A model generated the notes under the pieces. It saw only the letters and a list, made by a program, of their open reading frames with translations. It was not told the DNA's origin and did not search any database. The position numbers and the translations under genes were made by a program. Shown in pieces: positions 177 through 7,304 of a stretch of 11,416 nucleotides of DNA (the stretch's first letter is position 1; every line of letters begins with the position of its first letter). This DNA comes from Paramicrosporidium saccamoebae KSL3 (lineage: Eukaryota; Fungi; Cryptomycota), in the NCBI GenBank assembly GCA_002794465.1, contig MTSL01000052.1:14711-26126 (forward strand), written 5' to 3'.

Positions 177-761
177 TTAGATGGAAGTAGTAGGATGGCA
201 CTCCCCAGAAGAGGGATGCACCACAGGATGGTGCGCCACAGAAGAGGGATGCATCACAGGATGATGCGCTCCAGGGGGATAGTACGTCCCAGGAGGGGGA
301 TGCACCATTATGGGCTGCGCAATACCAACAGGGGCCTGTATGGGCAGCACGGGCTCTACAATTCCCATCGGCCTGAATATCGCCAATGAGCCCGTCTCGA
401 ATTGAGGGTACAGCGGCAGTGAGAGGATCAACAAAATGATTCCAGTTCCGTAAGATCCGGTCCACAGAGAGAGGGCAACAAATATCTCAAGACAGATGGC
501 GGCTGCTAGATAAGTAGCACGCCCTGCGTTCTTGTTCAGGGTGGCAAGACACAATACACCTGGAACAAAGCACAAAACAAAGGCTACAACTGCAACGAGG
601 AATGATAATTGGCCTCCGAGTAGGAAAGAGACCGCAATGCCAGATAACTAAAATTGTCAGGTATGAAATAGACGTGATACCAAAAAATAAGCCCCAAGAA
701 GCCCATAGATAATGGTGCCGAGCCACTGGCGCTTTCTGGCGGGTTGTACAGAGCTGCTCAT
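177..761 (-). CDS. Hypothetical 4-TM membrane protein with Pro/His-rich C-terminal tail, 183 aa; complement(join(177..647,681..761))
   Basis: Removing a 33-nt intron (648-680) joins MSSSVQPARKRQWLGTIIYGLLGAYFL to LSGIAVSFLLGGQLSFLVAVVAFVLCFVPG..., which is the frame of track ORF 177..575. There are four hydrophobic segments, then a PPPGTYYPPGAHHPVMHPSS tail. AATAAA lies 30 nt past the stop. An alternative in-frame ATG is at 797. No family recognised. Confidence 0.7.
204..308. repeat. Coding tandem repeat: 33-bp unit x2 (206-238, 239-271) plus a degenerate third core (288-308)
   Basis: CAGAAGAGGGATGCACCACAGGATGGTGCGCCA / CAGAAGAGGGATGCATCACAGGATGATGCGCTC. Encodes (G/V)AHHPV(M/V)HPSS on the minus strand and RRGMHHRM(V/M)R on the plus strand. 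Confidence 0.9.
648..680 (-). other. Spliceosomal mini-intron, 33 nt
   Basis: GTATCACGTCTATTTCATACCTGACAATTTTAG: GTA donor, CTGAC branch point, TAG acceptor. Removal restores a continuous hydrophobic ORF; if retained it reads an in-frame TGA and TAG. Confidence 0.8.
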
Positions 762-1221
762 GATACCGATAGTGTTGGTAATACCCTGGTTTAGCATCCA
801 GGGATCTAATGAGCAGTGTGATTGGCCATGTCGAGAACTGACATCGTGGGCGGCCAGGTCTACCCCATGGCGCCACCACTAAATGGGCTTGAGGAGTCTG
901 TCCTATAAGATTGATATCTTTATCAGCACCAAGTGGTGGCACAACATCCATTACTTTTATTAAATATAACCCAGCATTTATGTAGCGAGATTCTTCGTCT
1001 GCCCATGGTATCTATAATATCCCGGAACCTAGTGAATCGACCCATCACGTATCAATTTGCGTGGCGGATGATTTATTAGCAGTAGTCATCCAGCTTGGGA
1101 TGTATAGTCGAAAAGACAGATCATAGCGGTAAAGTTGTATATACAAGCACTGTAAATAGTGACAACACCATGACTTTAATCCAGTCACTAAGCTTCTTAC
1201 ACCCACGTATATATACAAACA

Positions 1222-1539
1222 CTACATTTCAAGGTAGTCTGCCACCAGCAACAAATCCAGCGACTCTTCAGCACCAATATCCCACGGGGGACTTTGCTCC
1301 AACCCATCAAATTTCCTTCTGTGGTGCAAGAAGCTGCACACACGCTCCACTAGTCTTCCCGGAATGCCATGCAGCTGCACCGTGCCGGAGGACTCGACGA
1401 ACCCGTTGGACGCGTCGAGGAACATGGAGAGGGTACGACTAAAGAGGGCGGTCTCTCTCTCAATAATAAACTCCATCCCATCGTCGCTGAGTAGACGGAC
1501 GTGGGCGGGTCCCTTTGTGGACGCATCCAGCAATGACAT
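1222..1539 (-). CDS. ELC1: Elongin C (SKP1/BTB/POZ fold), 105 aa
   Basis: HVRLLSDDGMEFIIERETALFSRTL...IPGRLVERVCSFL...LDLLLVADYLEM matches the Elongin C pattern (YVKLISSDGHEFIVKRE...IPSHVLSKVCMYF...LELLMAANFLDC). The first ATG is at 1539; the track start at 1545 is TTG. Confidence 0.93.
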   Translation of the reverse strand: MSLLDASTKGPAHVRLLSDDGMEFIIERETALFSRTLSMFLDASNGFVESSGTVQLHGIPGRLVERVCSFLHHRRKFDGLEQSPPWDIGAEESLDLLLVADYLEM

Positions 1540-1583
1540 GCTCAAACAATAATTATTTAACGGGACGTCTCTTTAAGACGGAG

Positions 1584-1635
1584 TGATTGATGCAAGGCTT
1601 GTCGAGAATGATTGATGCAAGGCTTGTCCAGAATG
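1584..1635. repeat. 25-bp tandem duplication, 1 mismatch
   Basis: TGATTGATGCAAGGCTTGTC(G/C)AGAA at 1584-1608 and 1609-1633, about 45 bp upstream of the ELC1 ATG. Confidence 0.95.
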
Positions 1636-2330
1636 CACAGGATTCGATCACAAATGTTGCCAAATACTCAATGTTACGTGATGTCACTGTGATGCAGAGT
1701 GTCCCGTAGTGATGCAACAGCCTACGTACAGAAATTCCCTATCGTGACACTTCAAGCGGGAGCTCTTTTATTAAAGATCATCCTCATCTATGAGGCAAGA
1801 CTCACCGTCAGATCCTAGCGCCCAATGAGAGTTATTAGACCTTGAACATGGCGAGTTGGCTCACCACATCTCACAGAGGATTGATTAGCTGGGTATGTGA
1901 CGTAGAGGCAGGGGGTTGATTAGTTGCTGGGTATTTGAGGACAGTGAAATGTGTATCCATACTATTCTAGGATTAGCAGTGAATAAACCCCCCTTCCCGT
2001 CCATACTATTTATCCCCACTACGCAACCTTGACAATATGTAAAAGGTCTATAACAAGGCTCACTAGGTGGGAATAAAGAGTTTGTTGACGGGTGAACACA
2101 ATTTTATTAACGTATATGGTTTCTTTATGGGCAGCCAAACTGGCTTGTGGGACCGCTATCTGGGTCGGACTCACCAATAACAAGTGGATGCTGTTTAACA
2201 GAGTCTTCTACAATCCATAAGCAAACAGTACATGCATATTACGTGCGAGGAATACTAGAAAGACACATCTCACAGCGTTGACGAATTCACAAACGCACTG
2301 GCTAGAATTTTATTAAGAGTTTAAAGGCCC

Positions 2331-2777
2331 TTAAGAGAGCAAGCTGGATCGGGCAAGGCCGTGTGCAAAGGCGTTACTAATCAAAGCGACCGGCAAGATC
2401 AAGTCGAGAAAGATAAGGAGGTTGAACAGACGACGCCATTTGAAAAACATCATCAGTACCGCCAATATGATCCAGAAGGCCAAGAAGATCCATGTAAGTG
2501 CATTGGTCGCTCCATAGGGACCTGCTGCGATTGCACTGATGCTGGTGGCCGCAACCAAGATCAATGTGCCATCTCGAAAGTGTTTTGAGATGCGCCGAAA
2601 TCTGCCCTCCCGTCCATCCTCAATAGGCGTCATGATGACACCATCTTCGGGCTTTCTGTCGTTCGAGGTGAAAAGGAGTGGAAGATAGGAAAGCCACCAG
2701 AAGATGAACATGACAAAGACGGCTACCCAGCTTGCCTTGACATCGTAGGGACTCCAGTCTCCACTGGCAGCGTTCAT
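2331..2777 (-). CDS. Hypothetical 4-TM membrane protein, 148 aa
   Basis: Intact ATG-TAA ORF with four hydrophobic helices and a basic cytosolic loop (GRFRRISKHFRDG). AATAAA lies 16 nt after the stop (2309-2314). From memory it resembles uncharacterised small membrane proteins of early-diverging fungi (R..RD..L.L...N.LTWIF); this is unverified. Confidence 0.8.
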   Translation of the reverse strand: MNAASGDWSPYDVKASWVAVFVMFIFWWLSYLPLLFTSNDRKPEDGVIMTPIEDGREGRFRRISKHFRDGTLILVAATSISAIAAGPYGATNALTWIFLAFWIILAVLMMFFKWRRLFNLLIFLDLILPVALISNAFAHGLARSSLLS

Positions 2778-3002
2778 TGGGGTTGGTTATCGCCGACTCG
2801 TACTATATATGTCACAACTCTATCTGTGTAAGATCATTTCGTCTCCGTAAAGTCAACCCCCATACCTAAGCTTAGAGGCTCCATTGAGGGATTTGATCCG
2901 TAGATATACTCATTTGGGCCACATAGCGTGGAGCTTACCCATAAACTGGCAAGTCCCCTGGTTCGTCTACTCTCACTCTTTGCAGTAGTCTCACATTAGT
3001 TG

Positions 3003-3473
3003 ATGGATTTGTTACGGAGAACTGCTGAGGCTGGACCCACCAAGCCTCTCCGTGACAAGGTTGGACGGATAACAGACATTTTTGAAGCATTATTGCTCTC
3101 CCCTCCGCCGGTGGAGCAATGGCCAGAATGGACCTCTAGACTCGCCGCACTCATGTCTCAGTATGAGAATGCTCTGCGTGAGCTGCGGCCTTTGCTGTGC
3201 AGATATCTTTTGGTGCCGAACCAGCTGGGCACAAATACAGAGTTTGTGACAAATGTACTATTGCGGACACGCATGGCACCTGAAGTCGAGGCGCATTTGG
3301 AGGAGCTAAAGACAGAGGAGGAGACGGGTAATGTGATGCGGGCCATTTCGCAGATTTTGCAAGAAGGCGCCGATGGCCTAAAGAGTCCATTGAGAAACAC
3401 AATGGCCACTCCAATTACACAAGACGAAGAGCTGATCACAGCCATTAGGACCCATTACACTGCAGTGAAATAA
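3003..3473 (+). CDS. MED8: Mediator of RNA polymerase II transcription subunit 8, 156 aa
   Basis: WPEWTSRLAALMSQY...LLVP...LLRTRMAPEVE matches the Med8 hallmarks (WP..L..F..L..QL, vvvP, LLRTKL.PEVE). ATG is at 3003; the track start at 3000 is TTG. Confidence 0.82.
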   Translation: MDLLRRTAEAGPTKPLRDKVGRITDIFEALLLSPPPVEQWPEWTSRLAALMSQYENALRELRPLLCRYLLVPNQLGTNTEFVTNVLLRTRMAPEVEAHLEELKTEEETGNVMRAISQILQEGADGLKSPLRNTMATPITQDEELITAIRTHYTAVK

Positions 3474-3484
3474 ACGAGTTTATT
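3469..3484. terminator. Two opposed AATAAA poly(A) signals, each overlapping a stop codon
   Basis: Plus-strand AATAAA at 3469-3474 contains the MED8 TAA. Minus-strand AATAAA at 3484-3479 overlaps the TAA of ORF 3483..3950. Confidence 0.65.
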
Positions 3485-3950
3485 AGCGGAACGGCGGCGA
3501 ATGGTTGTTTTTCCGTTTATGACGATGCAGATAATGTGCAAAGTCATTCTCTTCAAAAATGTCACTCAGTCCCCGACTCTTCTGCGTTGGGAATTTAATG
3601 TCGGCAATAAGCTGTAGTCGCTGGTACGACTTTGGGAAGCAATGTTCCTCGAGGATAGATAACCTGCGGGTCGGATCAGCGGGAGGGGGAATCTCGTACT
3701 CCCAGCATTTGGTTTCCGCTGGCTTCGGGGCCGGCTTATTGTCCTTGACTATCCATGGACGCACTGTCAGTAGGGCTGGATCAAAGGCCAAGGGACTGGC
3801 CTGGTTCACCTCGATGCGAACCGACTCGAGCGGGTTGCTGTTTGGCTGTTTTTTGATGAAATGGACATAATCCTTCTTTTCAGGTTGATCATGGCGATGA
3901 TGGTAATCGCGCTCAATTCCGTCCAGCCAGTGTATCACATATGGTTCCAT
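3483..3950 (-). CDS. Hypothetical protein, 155 aa
   Basis: Intact ATG-TAA-TAA ORF filling the gap between MED8 and DBP5, with AATAAA on the stop. Soluble composition and a basic C-terminus (HRHKRK). No family recognised; a short upstream exon is possible. Confidence 0.72.
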   Translation of the reverse strand: MEPYVIHWLDGIERDYHHRHDQPEKKDYVHFIKKQPNSNPLESVRIEVNQASPLAFDPALLTVRPWIVKDNKPAPKPAETKCWEYEIPPPADPTRRLSILEEHCFPKSYQRLQLIADIKFPTQKSRGLSDIFEENDFAHYLHRHKRKNNHSPPFR

Positions 3951-4149: not shown

Positions 4150-5873
4150 TCAGAGAGGGGGAATATCGGGGTTGGGCGGGACAGCCGTCTGTCCGCGATT
4201 AAGTGACTGCAATTTCTGCTCCAATAACTCGACTGATTCAGTGGGCATGCGGATAATCTCACGCTCAAAGAACTCTTCCAAGGATCGGAGAACTTGGCGG
4301 GAGAGATCATTGTGGACAAAGTTGATGGCGACTCCGGAGCGTCCGAATCGGCCCGTGCGTCCAATGCGATGGACATATGTTTCAGGATCAGGATAGCGTT
4401 CAGGAGTCATGGGCAAATCAAAGTTGACAACAAGAGAGACTTGAAGGACGTCAATGCCACGAGCAAGGACATTGGTGGCAAGTAGAACCCGGGTTCGACC
4501 CTGTCTGAATTCATCAATGACCGTATCGCGCTCAGCGGGTGTCATTCCACCGTGGATTAATGACACCATGTGTCCTTCATCCTCCATCCGAGCTTTTACC
4601 TCCTCGGCAGAATTCCGAGTGGCAATGAAAATGATGCTTTGTCCCACTGTCAACAGTCCATAGATGGTGGATAGCATCTCCATCTTGTGGTGATACGAGT
4701 CACATTCAATGTAATATTGTTTGATTGAATCAACCGAGACTTCTTCACGTTTCAGGGTAATCTCATTGGCATTGGGAATGATCATGTGGGCAAATTCAAT
4801 GACGGCCCCATTAAAGGTGGCGGAGAAGAGTAAGAGCTGACAGTATTCGGGGCAAATCTTGCGCAGTCGCATGGATTGGAGACCCATACCTTGCTTGTCC
4901 AACATCACATCAGCCTCATCCAGAACAAAGACGCGGACTTGGGAAAGATCGACGAGACGACGACGTTCAAGTTCCAAGAGCGTTCCGGGAGTTCCAACCA
5001 GAATATGGGCATTGATGGGTTCACGACGAGGCGCCTCCTCGCGCAGACAAAGAGCCGAAGTGACCGAGGTGAATTGGCCCATCTTCTGGATTACATCGAG
5101 GATCTGTCGTGCCAATTCGCGGGTGGGAGCCAAACATAGAGCCTGCGGCACATTGAGTGTCGGATCAACACGCTTCAACATGGTCAAAGTGAAGGCGGCT
5201 GTCTTTCCAGTTCCTGACTGTGACTGTGCAATCATATTCTGTGGGGGATCGCTTAGCAAAAGGGGAAGAGCGTGTTCTTGTACTTTGCTAGGCTTGACAA
5301 ACTTCATGGCATAAATTCCCTTTAGCAGTTCTGGACTCAGTCCAAGTTCCTCAAAGGACTTGACGGAAAAGAGGGGGGAATTTACATCTGCCTGCTTATC
5401 AGCCAACTTGATATTGACGTTTTGAAGGGTCTCCATAAGACCATCCACCACCTTTGCAGTAGCCTCCATGTCGACGGGTTCCCGAGTTCGATTGTCCATA
5501 CGGTTTCCTGAGCCACGACGAGGAGCACTACGCTCATCGCGTTCGTTGCGTTCGTTGCCCCATCCGTCGCTTCTACCGCCCCATCCATTATCTTTATCAC
5601 CTCGTCCGTTGTCTTGACCACCCCATCCATTGCCTTTATCGCCACGTTCATTGTCGTGACTACCCCATCCATCGTCTCTACCGCCCCACCCACTACCACT
5701 GCCATTATCGTTACCGTTACCGTTATCTTGTCGTCGCTCCTCAGTATTCACGTCGCTAGTCATATCTTCGGCGGCTCCCCATCCATCATTCTCGCCAATA
5801 CGCATAGTATCGGAACGGTCTACAATTGGTCAGACGGCGCATGATTCCTTTTACCAGAAATGTTGCGAGACAT
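4150..5873 (-). CDS. DBP5: ATP-dependent DEAD-box RNA helicase Dbp5/DDX19 (mRNA export), 562 aa; complement(join(4150..5819,5855..5873))
   Basis: Dbp5-specific KLADKQADVNSPLFSVKSFEELGL, Q motif, SQSGTGKT, PTRELA, TPG, DEAD, SAT, RGID and PDPETYVHRIGRTGRFGR. A 19-nt first exon (MSRNIS) joins in frame through a 35-nt intron. Confidence 0.97.
5557..5784 (-). repeat. GWG-repeat low-complexity coding region of DBP5, including a 42-bp (14-aa) duplication
   Basis: Six GWG motifs: GWGSHDNERGDKGN / GWGGQDNGRGDKDN, flanked by GWGGRDDGWG / GWGGRSDGWG. Confidence 0.9.
5820..5854 (-). other. Spliceosomal mini-intron, 35 nt (DBP5 intron 1)
   Basis: GTAAAAGGAATCATGCGCCGTCTGACCAATTGTAG: GTA donor, CTGAC branch point, TAG acceptor. 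The phase-1 join G|AC gives an in-frame Asp. Confidence 0.75.
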
Positions 5874-5965: not shown

Positions 5966-7102
5966 ATGAGGCGACGTGATTGGTCATACCCGCAACTACT
6001 GTTATTTCGACGACGGAAGGATGCAGCAGAACAAGAAATGCCCGTCATAGCCAAGAGATACAAGGTGCGGTTTGAGGAAAAGGATCTGCGCTTCTCCGAG
6101 GCGTATCCCGTCGAGTTGGAGAAGGTTTTGCCGCTGGCCGAGTTTGACAGCGTTGTCCGAAAGGTTAACGAGGACATGACGGTGGAGATTCGCGATACCA
6201 ACGAAAACGTGCGGACTTGGGCCATGTGGACGTTGGGACTGTGTTTTGTCGCTGTGGGCTTATTTATGACGCCCGTTCTGTTTGTCAAAACCCGTCGACA
6301 GAAACAAGAGCTCAAGGACTTTTGGGAACGGCTGCGGATCTATCTGGGAGAGATCAACCGAAAGACGTATATGAAACGGAATTTGGAGTGGAAATTGGTA
6401 GAAGACAAGAAGAAACTAAAGGGGAGAGATGTAGTCAATCCCATGTTTGCCTATCGAATGGAAATTATCCATCGCACTCCCAAAACAAAGTCGATGAAAC
6501 AGGCTGACGCAACGTCAATGACGGCTATTGCGGCAGGCTCTGGGGCTTCCTCGACTTCCTTGTCGAGTCAAGGACCTGCGACAGGTGGAGATGAGAAATC
6601 TGCCTCTGATCGCGAAACAGACCGCCGAGGCGATTCAGACTCGGAAGACGACTATGAAGATGGCGCTGATATGGTGCTGGAGGAGGGCGCCTTCCCCCGA
6701 GAAGACATTATTCTCGAGGAGGAGGATGAAGACGACTACATTGACGAGGATGCCGGCAATTTGGCCAGTATTTCCAGTGTCGGCGCTGGCTCCTACAGTC
6801 GAGGCAGTCTAATTCTCACTCCCGCGGCCCTTGCTGTCGCTGCCTCTCAGGGACGGCGTGACTCTATGGAAACCGAATCGGCCAGTTCACCCAGCAATCG
6901 GACATTACCCACGGCCAAAGGTGCCTCTGAGGCTGAATCATTGGGCGAGTCACTGGGCGATTCAGTGGGCGAAAGTGATGTGGTTCCTAGACTGTCTGGA
7001 CGTAGACGCAATCAAAGGAAGAGGAGTTCAAGAGTGAGATTTACTGGATTATTTGACGATGAAGAGGAAGGGGAGGAAGAAGAAGAGGGAGCTGTCGAAT
7101 AG
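5966..7102 (+). CDS. Golgin subfamily A member 7 / ERF4-family protein with long acidic disordered C-terminal tail, 378 aa
   Basis: FSEAYPVELEKVLPLAEFDSVVRKVN...hydrophobic segment...LRIYLGEINRKTYMKRNLEW fits the ERF4/GOLGA7 pattern (YP..L...i...EF...i..iN ... l...N......rgl.w). The true start could be the second ATG (MPVIAK). Confidence 0.7.
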   Translation: MRRRDWSYPQLLLFRRRKDAAEQEMPVIAKRYKVRFEEKDLRFSEAYPVELEKVLPLAEFDSVVRKVNEDMTVEIRDTNENVRTWAMWTLGLCFVAVGLFMTPVLFVKTRRQKQELKDFWERLRIYLGEINRKTYMKRNLEWKLVEDKKKLKGRDVVNPMFAYRMEIIHRTPKTKSMKQADATSMTAIAAGSGASSTSLSSQGPATGGDEKSASDRETDRRGDSDSEDDYEDGADMVLEEGAFPREDIILEEEDEDDYIDEDAGNLASISSVGAGSYSRGSLILTPAALAVAASQGRRDSMETESASSPSNRTLPTAKGASEAESLGESLGDSVGESDVVPRLSGRRRNQRKRSSRVRFTGLFDDEEEGEEEEEGAVE

Positions 7103-7118
7103 CCGACTCGTCACTAAT

Positions 7119-7168
7119 TTGAGTGAGTTGTTGAGTGAGTTGTCGAGTGATAACATTCGAGTGGTAAT
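7119..7168. repeat. Degenerate 12-bp tandem repeat (TTGAGTGAGTTG x2, then TCGAGTG variants)
   Basis: 7119-7130 and 7131-7142 are identical, followed by decaying TCGAGTGATAAC and TCGAGTGGTAAT. Confidence 0.8.
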
Positions 7169-7190: not shown

Positions 7191-7304
7191 CTCAACTATC
7201 CTCACATCTCGGCTATCTTCACATTTCGGCTATCTTTACATCTCAATTGCCCCACACATCTCGGCTATCCTCACATCTCAATTGCCCCCACATTACAATT
7301 ACCC
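7191..7304. repeat. 17-bp minisatellite with two interleaved unit types, about 6-7 units
   Basis: Type A GGCTATCYT-YACATYTC at 7211-7227, 7228-7244 and 7263-7279, with a partial copy at 7196-7210. Type B AATTGCCCC(A)-CACATYWC at 7245-7262 and 7280-7296, with a partial copy from 7297. Confidence 0.9.

What the first reader, a model, noticed from the sequence alone, without database searches (positions are those of the whole stretch)
5557..5784. DBP5 carries an N-terminal array of six GWG motifs: candidate Argonaute hook on the mRNA-export helicase
Seen: an otherwise canonical Dbp5 has a roughly 120-aa G/D/N/R-rich extension with GWG at track residues W9, W40, W47, W61, W75 and W82 (core spacing 7/14/14/7), built by internal duplication. 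Established: GW/WG repeats in G/S/D/N-rich disordered regions are the Argonaute-binding platform of GW182/TNRC6, S. pombe Tas3, plant NRPE1, SPT5L and the helicase SDE3. Yeast Dbp5 and human DDX19 have shorter N-termini without such arrays. I recall similar NDGWG motifs in Cryptococcus Dbp5 (unverified), which would make this a recurrent but uncharacterised feature. Inference: this Dbp5 may couple mRNP remodelling at the nuclear pore to small-RNA surveillance.
Basis: partly seen in the sequence, partly recalled or inferred. Interest (0 to 1): 0.75.

Follow-up and report, generated by a model that had tools for sequence, protein, structure and literature searches.

The report
Tryptophan docking repeats on Dbp5 tail
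The mRNA-export helicase Dbp5 of the amoeba parasite Paramicrosporidium saccamoebae has a floppy N-terminal tail with six glycine-tryptophan-glycine motifs; similar motifs recur in other fungal Dbp5 proteins and look like docking sites for a partner protein, but nothing here shows that the partner is the RNA-silencing protein Argonaute.

Summary
Window 4150-5805 (-) is an intronless 551-aa Dbp5/DDX19 orthologue from Paramicrosporidium saccamoebae. Its only six Trp residues (W9, 40, 47, 61, 75, 82) are all GWG, lie in a predicted disordered tail, and are partly built from a 42-bp tandem duplication.

The feature is not a one-off. Trp is the favoured aromatic in the tails of the closest relatives (3.5% W against 0.8% F and 0.8% Y) and sits in a fixed G-W-G-x-x-acidic context while the spacers diverge.

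Animal DDX19 has a Trp-centred N-terminal docking motif (SBM) that binds MIF4G proteins. I find SBM-like "SWADxVDE" motifs in fungal, plant and algal Dbp5, although the literature calls the SBM metazoan-only.

My best reading is a multivalent Trp-anchored docking array for an unidentified Trp-pocket partner.

Evidence on Argonaute is mixed. RNAi-null C. deuterogattii has W-to-L at two of four DGW motifs. RNAi-proficient C. depauperatus lost all four, and many RNAi-proficient fungi have none. Whether P. saccamoebae has an Argonaute could not be tested with these tools.

The parts
4150..5805 (-). Dbp5/DDX19 orthologue CDS, 551 aa, no intron
   Evidence: ORF list and translation. Pfam DEAD plus Helicase_C. 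PDB Dbp5 at 1e-143. Identical protein on NCBI contig MTSL01000052.1 of GCA_002794465.1, which is Paramicrosporidium saccamoebae.
5470..5805 (-). Disordered N-terminal tail, residues 1-112, G/D/N/R-rich with net negative charge
   Evidence: AlphaFold2 with a 36-sequence alignment gives coil at pLDDT 35-45 for residues 1-112. Composition.
5776..5784 (-). GWG motif 1 (G8-W9-G10) in 'MRIGENDGWGAAEDM', the N-terminal-most motif, conserved in position among close relatives
   Evidence: Relatives have R-[ILF]-x3-D-G-W-G-x-x-E-E near the N-terminus: MRISENNGWGMPEE, SIRLDGNDGWGVEEEE, SRFGETDGWGAFEES.
5683..5691 (-). GWG motif 2 (W40), 'SGSGWGGRDD'
5662..5670 (-). GWG motif 3 (W47), 'RDDGWGSHDNE'
5620..5628 (-). 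GWG motif 4 (W61), 'DKGNGWGGQDNG'
   Evidence: inside the 42-bp tandem repeat
5578..5586 (-). GWG motif 5 (W75), 'DKDNGWGGRSD'
   Evidence: inside the 42-bp tandem repeat
5557..5565 (-). GWG motif 6 (W82), 'RSDGWGNERNERDE'
5575..5672 (-). Tandem duplication that built the core of the array: 42-bp (14-aa) unit x2.3 at 83% match, with a 21-bp sub-period
   Evidence: Tandem Repeats Finder
5431..5469 (-). Conserved helix, residues 113-125 (AKVVDGLMETLQN), just before the KLADKQAD...NSPL entry to RecA1. It lies at the position of the N-terminal regulatory helix of DDX19.
   Evidence: AF2 helix 113-125. Consensus 'VxGLxExLxxVxVKLADKQADVNSPLYS' in alignment A1. The equivalence to the DDX19 helix is my inference from position.
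4216..5364 (-). Helicase core (two RecA domains), residues 148-530
   Evidence: Aligned to yeast Dbp5 chain 3pey_A 4-387. AF2 pLDDT mostly above 85.

Best explanation
The six GWG motifs form a multivalent array of Trp-anchored short linear motifs on a disordered, acidic N-terminal tail of Dbp5. Each Trp, held between glycines and followed by acidic residues, is a candidate plug for a Trp-binding pocket on a partner protein. [quoted passage not shown] This is the same logic by which the Trp-centred SBM at the N-terminus of animal DDX19 recruits the MIF4G proteins PAIP1, CTIF and SLIP1 without changing ATPase activity. The array grew by tandem duplication of a 14-aa unit from an older 'DGWG' motif shared with other fungal Dbp5 proteins.

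Shown: the motifs, the disorder, the duplication, the Trp-specific conservation and the recurrence. Inferred: that the motifs dock a partner, and where this happens. The partner is unresolved. My ranking is Argonaute about 0.25, another Trp-pocket protein such as CCR4-NOT Caf40/CNOT9 or a MIF4G-type factor about 0.3, and the remainder non-specific or no function.
For: 1. All six Trp of the protein are GWG in the tail, far beyond chance.
2. The tail is predicted fully disordered.
3. Selection acts on the motif and not on the spacers. In 31 tails of the nearest relatives (2,891 aa), Trp is 3.5% against F 0.8% and Y 0.8%. Among 122 tail Trp sites across all hits, 77 have G at -1, 74 have G at +1, and E/D dominate +3 to +5. 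Copy number (1-9) and spacers vary freely.
4. An equivalent D-[DNG]-G-W-G-[EDN]-[PA] motif occurs in Dbp5 of Tremellomycetes (Vanrija, Kwoniella, Tremella, Cryptococcus x4), Chytridium, Fimicolochytrium and Tulasnella. Of 315 intact tails surveyed, 25 have three or more.
5. There is direct precedent in the same tail. The SBM of DDX19 (Trp6, small residue at +1, Val10, acidic residues) docks on MIF4G domains: crystal structure 4JHJ (PMC3763545), W6A/V10A loses CTIF binding (PMC8373075), and PAIP1 is recruited to the pore with no ATPase effect (bioRxiv 10.64898/2026.07.31.742013).
6. The array arose by tandem duplication, a common route to higher valency (general knowledge).
Against: No binding partner was identified or modelled, so docking is inferred from conservation alone. 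The internal motifs are Gly-rich coil and lack the +4 hydrophobic residue of the helical SBM, so the one partner class with structural precedent probably does not fit them. Many Dbp5 orthologues work without any tail Trp (183 of 315), so the function is accessory. The tail alone found no homologue in the protein database. Gly-rich low-complexity regions are a known source of false-positive GW 'platforms' (Karlowski 2010).
Confidence: 0.55

Rival explanations
1. Argonaute hook. The GWG Trp residues insert into the Trp pockets of the Argonaute PIWI domain, tethering Argonaute to Dbp5 so that freshly exported mRNPs are screened by small RNAs at the pore.
For: The motif style matches GW182/NRPE1-type platforms: G/S/W-rich, then D/E/N, poor in C/F/H/M/Y, with only WG conserved between orthologues (PMC2910046). 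From my own recollection, fungal forms such as GWGEP, GWGDP and SWGAPP resemble the [SG]WG[EDK]P motifs of GW182; this is not a tool result. The 14-residue spacings would allow two pockets to be bridged (structural knowledge, not tested here).

In the only RNAi-null Cryptococcus lineage, C. deuterogattii (R265, Ram5 and other isolates), two of four DGW motifs are W-to-L. C. gattii, C. decagattii, C. neoformans and C. deneoformans keep all four (RNAi status from PMC11185503). With H99 as outgroup, the tail shows 10 deuterogattii-specific against 2 gattii-specific changes (p=0.04), while the core shows 3 against 4.

In C. elegans germ cells DDX-19 and the Argonaute CSR-1 share a perinuclear 'D granule' (bioRxiv 10.1101/2024.03.25.586584). 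That is a spatial precedent only.
Against: C. depauperatus keeps the canonical RNAi genes yet has lost all four DGW motifs while keeping SWAD. C. deuterogattii still keeps two DGW motifs. RNAi-proficient lineages have no tail Trp at all: Agaricomycetes, Rhodotorula and Vanderwaltozyma, plus Mucorales apart from one odd Rhizopus microsporus fragment. Their RNAi status is from general knowledge; the tail data are. The main text of a Cryptococcus RNAi-factor screen with affinity purifications does not mention Dbp5 (PMC6643885). The 7-residue spacings are probably too short to bridge two pockets. The C. deuterogattii signal is small (two sites, p about 0.04-0.07, no correction for multiple looks). 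Argonaute in P. saccamoebae is unverified: the genome paper and its supplements are silent.
Confidence: 0.25
2. Non-specific 'sticker' tail. Evenly spaced aromatic residues and arginines in a Gly-rich polyampholyte drive weak multivalent self-association or partitioning into the FG-nucleoporin phase, raising the local Dbp5 concentration at the pore without any dedicated partner. This would resemble the tails of DDX4, LAF-1 and Ded1.
For: The tail is disordered with regularly spaced Trp (7/14/14/7), 15 Arg, 26 Gly and blocks of opposite charge. Low-complexity tails on DEAD-box ATPases are a known route to condensates, and Trp and Arg favour entry into FG phases (general knowledge, not tested here). 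Copy number varies freely between relatives, as expected if only valency matters.
Against: Sticker models tolerate F/Y/W exchange, but these tails use Trp about four times more often than F or Y and keep Gly on both sides plus acidic residues downstream. That pattern points to a shaped pocket. In Tremellomycetes a single, sharply conserved DDGWGxP copy is the norm, and one copy cannot act through valency. The net charge is about -7 over residues 1-110 and -10 over residues 1-125, and Asp/Glu disfavour FG-phase entry.
Confidence: 0.2
3. All six motifs are copies of the animal-type SBM and dock MIF4G-domain proteins.
For: They sit in the same protein and the same tail, and share the Trp plus small residue plus acidic pattern. 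Zebrafish SLBP's SBM has W-G. SBM-like SWADxVDE motifs exist in fungal Dbp5. Motif 1 sits at the extreme N-terminus, like the SBM.
Against: The SBM binds as a helix with a hydrophobic residue at +4 (Val10; W6A/V10A abolishes binding). None of the six motifs has a hydrophobic residue at +4, the internal ones are Gly-rich, and AF2 predicts coil. In Tremellomycetes SWAD and DGWG coexist as distinct motifs in one tail. The known partners PAIP1, CTIF and SLIP1 are reported as metazoan-only.
Confidence: 0.08
4. Functionally neutral low-complexity expansion: replication slippage of a GC-rich repeat that happens to encode GWG.
For: A tandem DNA repeat is present. Many Dbp5 orthologues lack tail Trp. 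The tail has no detectable homologues as a sequence.
Against: W9, W40 and W82 lie outside the 42-bp tandem repeat, and only W47, W61 and W75 lie within it. The 83% match shows the copies have diverged while keeping GWG. Relatives at 60-79% identity with unrelated spacers keep GWG. Trp is normally the rarest residue, yet it reaches 3.5% in these tails.
Confidence: 0.07

Closest known systems
SLIP1-binding motif (SBM) at the N-terminus of vertebrate DDX19/DBP5, also in SLBP and eIF3g; docks on MIF4G domains of SLIP1/MIF4GD, CTIF and PAIP1 (PDB 4JHJ)
   Same: Same protein and same disordered N-terminal tail. Trp-centred with a small residue at +1 (Ala, or Gly in zebrafish SLBP) and acidic residues downstream. 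It acts as a recruitment site, not an ATPase regulator.
   Different: The SBM is a single copy that folds into a helix and needs a hydrophobic residue at +4. The six motifs here are Gly-flanked coil without that residue and are repeated. The known partners are reported only from animals.
GW182/TNRC6 Trp motifs (Argonaute-binding domain, and the CCR4-NOT/PAN3-binding silencing domain)
   Same: GW/WG in G/S/D/N/E-rich disorder, in many copies. Only the Trp and its small neighbours are conserved, and spacers turn over quickly.
   Different: The host is an essential DEAD-box export factor. The tail is Arg-rich and Ser-poor, two of the spacings are only 7 residues, and no binding to Argonaute or CNOT9 has been shown.
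Argonaute platforms of S. pombe Tas3, plant NRPE1, SPT5L and the helicase SDE3
   Same: Repeat-built WG/GW platforms, one of them (SDE3) on a helicase; same compositional signature.
   Different: Those proteins are dedicated silencing factors with genetic evidence. Dbp5 has none, and the motif's distribution does not track RNAi cleanly.
'DGWG' motif in Dbp5 of Tremellomycetes (Cryptococcus, Kwoniella, Vanrija, Tremella) and chytrids (uncharacterised; defined here)
   Same: Same protein region and same core, D/N-G-W-G plus acidic residue or Pro. Cryptococcus has four copies and close relatives of P. saccamoebae have up to nine tail Trp motifs.
   Different: Usually a single copy 20-40 residues before the regulatory helix, and accompanied by a separate SWAD motif that P. 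saccamoebae lacks.
Low-complexity 'sticker' tails of DEAD-box proteins DDX4, LAF-1 and Ded1
   Same: A disordered, Gly/Arg-containing tail with spaced aromatic residues on a DEAD-box ATPase.
   Different: Here the aromatic residue is exclusively Trp in a fixed GWG context and the tail is net acidic.

Membership tests
Dbp5/DDX19 orthologue | DEAD-box core that matches Dbp5/DDX19 better than other DEAD-box subfamilies | tested here: met
   PDB: yeast Dbp5 1e-143 and DDX19B 1e-127, against eIF4A 1e-81 and Dhh1 1e-70. Pfam DEAD plus Helicase_C.
Dbp5/DDX19 orthologue | Conserved pre-core segment (helix plus KLADxQAD..NSPL) | tested here: met
   Nearly invariant columns V130, L134, A135, D136, Q138, D140, P144 and L145 in alignment A1. 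AF2 helix 113-125.
Argonaute-binding GW/WG platform (Ago hook) | Several WG/GW motifs in an intrinsically disordered region | tested here: met
   Six GWG in residues 8-83; pLDDT below 45 and coil.
Argonaute-binding GW/WG platform (Ago hook) | Biased composition: rich in G, S, W, then E, D, N; poor in C, F, H, M, Y | tested here: met
   Residues 1-110: G 26, D 15, N 14, E 9, S 7, W 6; C 0, F 0, Y 0, H 1, M 3, against the criteria in PMC2910046. One deviation: Arg is high (15) and Ser is modest.
Argonaute-binding GW/WG platform (Ago hook) | Only WG/GW and composition conserved between orthologues | tested here: met
   Relatives at 60-79% identity keep GWG with unrelated spacers and 1-9 copies.
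Argonaute-binding GW/WG platform (Ago hook) | An Argonaute with Trp pockets encoded in the same genome | not testable with these tools
   No tool gives access to the rest of GCA_002794465.1. The genome paper and its supplements do not mention RNAi genes.
Argonaute-binding GW/WG platform (Ago hook) | Co-distribution with RNAi across lineages | tested here: inconclusive
   For: C. deuterogattii (RNAi-null) has W-to-L at 2 of 4 motifs and a faster-evolving tail. Against: C. depauperatus (RNAi genes kept) lost all four, and many RNAi-proficient fungi have none.
Argonaute-binding GW/WG platform (Ago hook) | Trp-dependent physical binding to Argonaute | not testable with these tools
   This needs pull-downs or complex modelling. 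The structure tool here predicts only single chains.
SBM (MIF4G-docking motif of DDX19/SLBP/eIF3g) | Trp followed by a small residue, with acidic residues at about +5 and +8 | tested here: inconclusive
   Every motif has Gly at +1. Motif 1 (W-G-A-A-E-D-M-T-S-D) has acidic residues at +4, +5 and +9. The internal motifs have scattered D/E.
SBM (MIF4G-docking motif of DDX19/SLBP/eIF3g) | Hydrophobic residue at +4 (Val10) on a helix that forms on binding | tested here: not met
   No motif has a hydrophobic residue at +4. The flanks are Gly-rich and AF2 predicts coil.
SBM (MIF4G-docking motif of DDX19/SLBP/eIF3g) | A SLIP1/CTIF/PAIP1-type MIF4G partner in the organism | not testable with these tools
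   These partners are reported as metazoan-only. The P. saccamoebae proteome cannot be searched here.
CCR4-NOT-binding Trp motifs (GW182 silencing-domain type) | Trp flanked by G/S/T in a disordered region | tested here: met
CCR4-NOT-binding Trp motifs (GW182 silencing-domain type) | Trp-dependent binding to CNOT9/Caf40 pockets | not tested
   No complex modelling or binding assay is available. This is only a candidate, suggested by general knowledge of CNOT9 Trp pockets.
Sticker-and-spacer condensate tail (DDX4-like) | Aromatic stickers that are interchangeable (F/Y/W) between orthologues | tested here: not met
   W 3.5% against F 0.8% and Y 0.8% in 31 relatives' tails, with a fixed G-W-G context.

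The most novel reading that the evidence does not exclude
The DGWG motifs of fungal Dbp5, expanded to six copies in Paramicrosporidium, are genuine Argonaute hooks. [quoted passage not shown] The Trp residues would decay once RNAi is lost, as is starting to happen in C. deuterogattii.
Probability: 0.22. Interest if true: 0.85.

Novelty: new variant of a known kind. Interest (0 to 1): 0.55.

Why it matters
Dbp5 is the essential last step of mRNA export. What its variable N-terminal tail does outside animals is essentially unknown.

The result gives two concrete, testable motifs in that tail. The first is an SBM-like SWADxVDE motif that, contrary to two papers, is not confined to animals. The second is a DGWG motif of the GW182 type that recurs in Rozellomycota, chytrids and Tremellomycetes.

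If the DGWG partner is Argonaute or CCR4-NOT, mRNA export would be physically wired to silencing or decay at the pore in fungi. If it is a MIF4G-like factor, the pore-coupled mRNP maturation just described in animals would be far older than thought.

Cryptococcus relatives and other culturable Tremellomycetes make this directly testable.

Tried and rejected
1. RNAi status of P. saccamoebae. Paper searches for Paramicrosporidium with Argonaute, Dicer or RNAi, the genome paper, its supplements and three microsporidian reviews or genome papers gave no statement. One search was badly framed and returned mostly irrelevant papers.

2. A protein search with the tail alone (residues 1-112) found only one candidate sharing words and nothing scored. 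The tail cannot be traced by sequence similarity.

3. tRNA and Rfam scans of the window found nothing.

4. I expected C. depauperatus to be a second RNAi-loss lineage, which would have made its loss of DGWG strong support. The literature says it keeps the canonical RNAi genes, so it counts against.

5. I looked for Dbp5 among Cryptococcus RNAi factors. Burke 2019 does not mention it in the main text. Dumesic 2013 is not held.

6. I considered using the last protein search to build a panel of named microsporidian Dbp5 proteins. I rejected this because candidate microsporidian-like representatives have almost no tail, so they could only repeat the point that RNAi does not need the motif.

7. I considered typing an Argonaute sequence from memory to fish for the P. 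saccamoebae gene. I rejected this because only the best 120 of many thousands of Argonautes are listed, so a miss would mean nothing.

8. The neutral slippage reading is disfavoured (see rivals).
Full report
**What is there**

The window is part of contig MTSL01000052.1 of assembly GCA_002794465.1. Accession MTSL00000000 is the genome of Paramicrosporidium saccamoebae, a Rozellomycota intranuclear parasite of amoebae.

The ORF at 4150-5805 on the minus strand encodes 551 aa without an intron. It has DEAD and Helicase_C domains. It matches solved Dbp5 and DDX19B structures much better than any other DEAD-box subfamily: 1e-143 and 1e-127, against 1e-81 for eIF4A. An in-frame stop lies nine codons upstream of the ATG, and the closest relative begins the same way, so the N-terminus is correctly called.

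**Check of the observation**

The protein has six Trp residues in total, at positions 9, 40, 47, 61, 75 and 82.

- The first 110 residues are G/R/D/N-rich and contain no F, Y or C.
- None of 200,000 shuffles of the tail gave more than four GWG.
- The chance that all six Trp fall in the first 83 residues is about 1e-5.
- Tandem Repeats Finder reports a 42-bp unit x2.3 at 83% match at 5575-5672, with a 21-bp sub-period. The core of the array did arise by internal duplication, which also means the six motifs are not six independent events.
- AlphaFold2 with a 36-sequence alignment predicts residues 1-112 as coil at pLDDT 35-45, a helix at 113-125, and a confident two-RecA core.

**Is the motif selected?**

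The nearest relatives are mostly unnamed metagenome proteins at 60-79% identity (the query cluster P0001 to P0042). Their tails are of different length and unalignable sequence, but they carry one to nine Trp, mostly as GWG.

- Over 122 tail Trp sites across all hits, G is at -1 in 77 and at +1 in 74, and E/D dominate +3 to +5.
- In 31 relatives' tails, Trp is 3.5% of residues, against 0.8% F and 0.8% Y.
- The N-terminal-most motif is positionally conserved as R-[ILF]-x3-D-G-W-G-x-x-E-E.

An aromatic residue that is exclusively Trp, in a fixed context with free spacers, is the signature of a short linear motif read by a pocket. It is not the signature of generic low-complexity sequence.

**Wider distribution**

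An exhaustive search of 50%-identity cluster representatives and a second word-indexed search seeded with Vanrija Dbp5 gave 315 orthologues with intact tails. Of these, 183 have no tail Trp, 63 have a W-A-acidic motif, 65 have a GW-type motif, 25 have three or more GW-type motifs, and 24 have both kinds.

Named carriers of D-[DNG]-G-W-G-[EDN]-[PA] are:
- the Tremellomycetes Vanrija, Kwoniella, Tremella, Naematelia, Papiliotrema and Cryptococcus;
- the chytrids Chytridium and Fimicolochytrium;
- Tulasnella, in the form DDGWV.

Saccharomycotina, Agaricomycetes, Rhodotorula and Coemansia have none, and Mucorales have none apart from one odd Rhizopus microsporus fragment.

**The closest known thing**

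Vertebrate DDX19/DBP5 carries the SLIP1-binding motif at its extreme N-terminus (human DSWALAVDEQE).

- The motif is a Trp-centred helix in which Trp6 and Val10 fill a shallow pocket on the MIF4G protein SLIP1 and acidic residues meet arginines. Position +1 is small, and zebrafish SLBP has Gly there (PMC3763545; PDB 4JHJ).
- W6A/V10A abolishes binding to CTIF (PMC8373075).
- A 2026 preprint shows that PAIP1 uses the same motif to reach the pore, without affecting ATPase activity.

The principle is therefore established: a Trp-anchored docking site on the Dbp5 tail that recruits an mRNP-maturation cofactor. The six motifs here are not SBMs in the strict sense. None has the +4 hydrophobic residue, and the internal ones are Gly-rich coil. 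In Tremellomycetes SWAD and DGWG coexist as separate motifs.

By form, GWG in G/S/D/N/E-rich disorder with only WG conserved, the motifs belong with the GW182/NRPE1 type of Trp motif (PMC2910046). From general knowledge, the receptors for that type include the Argonaute PIWI pockets and also CNOT9 and PAN3.

**Test of the Argonaute reading**

Cryptococcus offers a natural experiment, because Coelho et al. 2024 find canonical RNAi genes in every Cryptococcus and Kwoniella species except C. deuterogattii.

In favour:
- C. deuterogattii R265 and Ram5 have Leu in place of Trp at two of the four DGW motifs (NDGLGEAATE, NNGLGETTPS).
- C. gattii, C. decagattii, C. neoformans and C. deneoformans keep all four.
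- With H99 as outgroup, the tail shows 10 deuterogattii-specific against 2 gattii-specific substitutions (binomial p=0.04), while the core shows 3 against 4.

Against:
- C. depauperatus, which keeps the RNAi genes, has lost all four DGW motifs while keeping SWAD.
- C. deuterogattii still keeps two motifs.
- Whole RNAi-proficient clades have none.
- The main text of a Cryptococcus RNAi screen with affinity purifications does not mention Dbp5.

No paper in the library connects Dbp5/DDX19 with GW motifs or direct Argonaute binding. The nearest precedent is co-localisation of DDX-19 with the Argonaute CSR-1 in C. elegans. Whether P. saccamoebae has an Argonaute could not be determined. I put the Argonaute reading at about one in four.

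**Conclusion**

The best-supported explanation is a multivalent, Trp-anchored docking array on the disordered Dbp5 tail. It was expanded by tandem duplication from an older fungal DGWG motif, and it recruits an as yet unidentified Trp-pocket partner to Dbp5.

The docking function is inferred from the pattern of conservation and from the SBM precedent. It has not been shown. A non-specific sticker tail is less likely because the aromatic residue is Trp-only in a fixed context, and because single conserved copies are the norm in Tremellomycetes. Neutral slippage is unlikely because half the motifs lie outside the DNA repeat and relatives keep GWG on unrelated spacers.

**A by-product**

W-A-D-x-V-[DE]-[DE] motifs that match the animal SBM occur in the Dbp5 tails of:
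- Cryptococcus (SWADMVDEDE, identical to the human pattern W-A-x-x-V-D-E-x-E), Vanrija, Trichosporon and Taphrina;
- Schizosaccharomyces osmophilus, as a looser W-A-S-acidic form (DWASIDSDEE);
- Orbilia and Ramularia;
- a red alga (Timspurckia), a green alga (Tetraselmis) and legume RH38/LOS4.

Two papers state that the motif is restricted to vertebrates or metazoans.

Noticed in passing
Proteins P0127, P0128, P0131, P0140, P0201, P0202, P0313, P0403, P0406, P0059 (Dbp5 orthologues; not in the window): An SBM-like 'S-W-A-D-x-V-[DE]-[DE]' motif sits in the N-terminal tail of Dbp5 from non-animals: Orbilia KTSWADAVHEE, Ramularia KINWADEEETA, Vanrija PKDWADDVEED, Cryptococcus SWADMVDEDE, Taphrina QKSWADEDSEE, red alga Timspurckia QKAWADISSDE, Vigna RH38 TKRWADEADEE and Tetraselmis SSKWGDSPEDD. 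S. osmophilus has a looser form, TDWASIDSDEE. Two papers state that the DDX19 SBM is vertebrate- or metazoan-only. The motif therefore looks far older than its known partners, or it arose repeatedly.
   Followed up: partly
Proteins P0409, P0414 (C. deuterogattii) against P0311, P0410, P0405, P0406: The RNAi-null species C. deuterogattii has Trp-to-Leu at two of the four DGW motifs of Dbp5. Its tail shows 10 lineage-specific changes against 2 in C. gattii, while the helicase core shows 3 against 4. C. depauperatus, which keeps the RNAi genes, has lost all four motifs.
   Followed up: yes
Proteins P0128, P0288-P0310 (Tremellomycete Dbp5 tails): Besides SWAD and DGWG, these tails share two more sharply conserved short motifs. 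One is 'APVASLLSRISGLST', which resembles the yeast Dbp5 Xpo1 export signal. The other is 'RPKPNTSNPLFGKALAGVK', which contains LFG. The tail is a string of linear motifs, not plain low complexity.
   Followed up: no
Proteins P0186 and P0263 (Dbp5-like representatives): Other Trp arrays with different flavours occur on Dbp5 tails. An unnamed JGI protein has six NPW/DPW motifs. A Rhizopus microsporus fragment has ten W-N-Q-Q-Q motifs. Trp arrays seem to have arisen repeatedly on this tail.
   Followed up: no
window 7196-7304 (also 7119-7150): AT-rich tandem repeats lie just downstream of the stop codon of the Erf4-like gene: 17-bp units x4.9 and a 35-bp unit x2.1 ('CTATCCTCACATCTCGG'), plus a 12-bp TTGAGTGAGTTG x2.7. 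Their function is unknown. They may be 3'-UTR or terminator-region repeats.
   Followed up: no
window 5966-7102 (+): The divergent neighbour of Dbp5 is an Erf4/GOLGA7-family protein (Pfam E=6e-7, barely above the cut-off) with a C-terminal extension of about 230 aa that is rich in Ser, Asp and Glu. The annotated start is at 6038. The two genes share an intergenic region of only about 160-230 bp.
   Followed up: no
window 192-269: A 33-bp tandem repeat x2.4 at 86% match lies inside an annotated 231-aa gene with no Pfam hit (window 177-951, minus strand).
   Followed up: no
window 1222-3950: A run of four small annotated genes (105-156 aa) has no Pfam family on record. They may be lineage-specific genes or over-annotation.
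   Followed up: no
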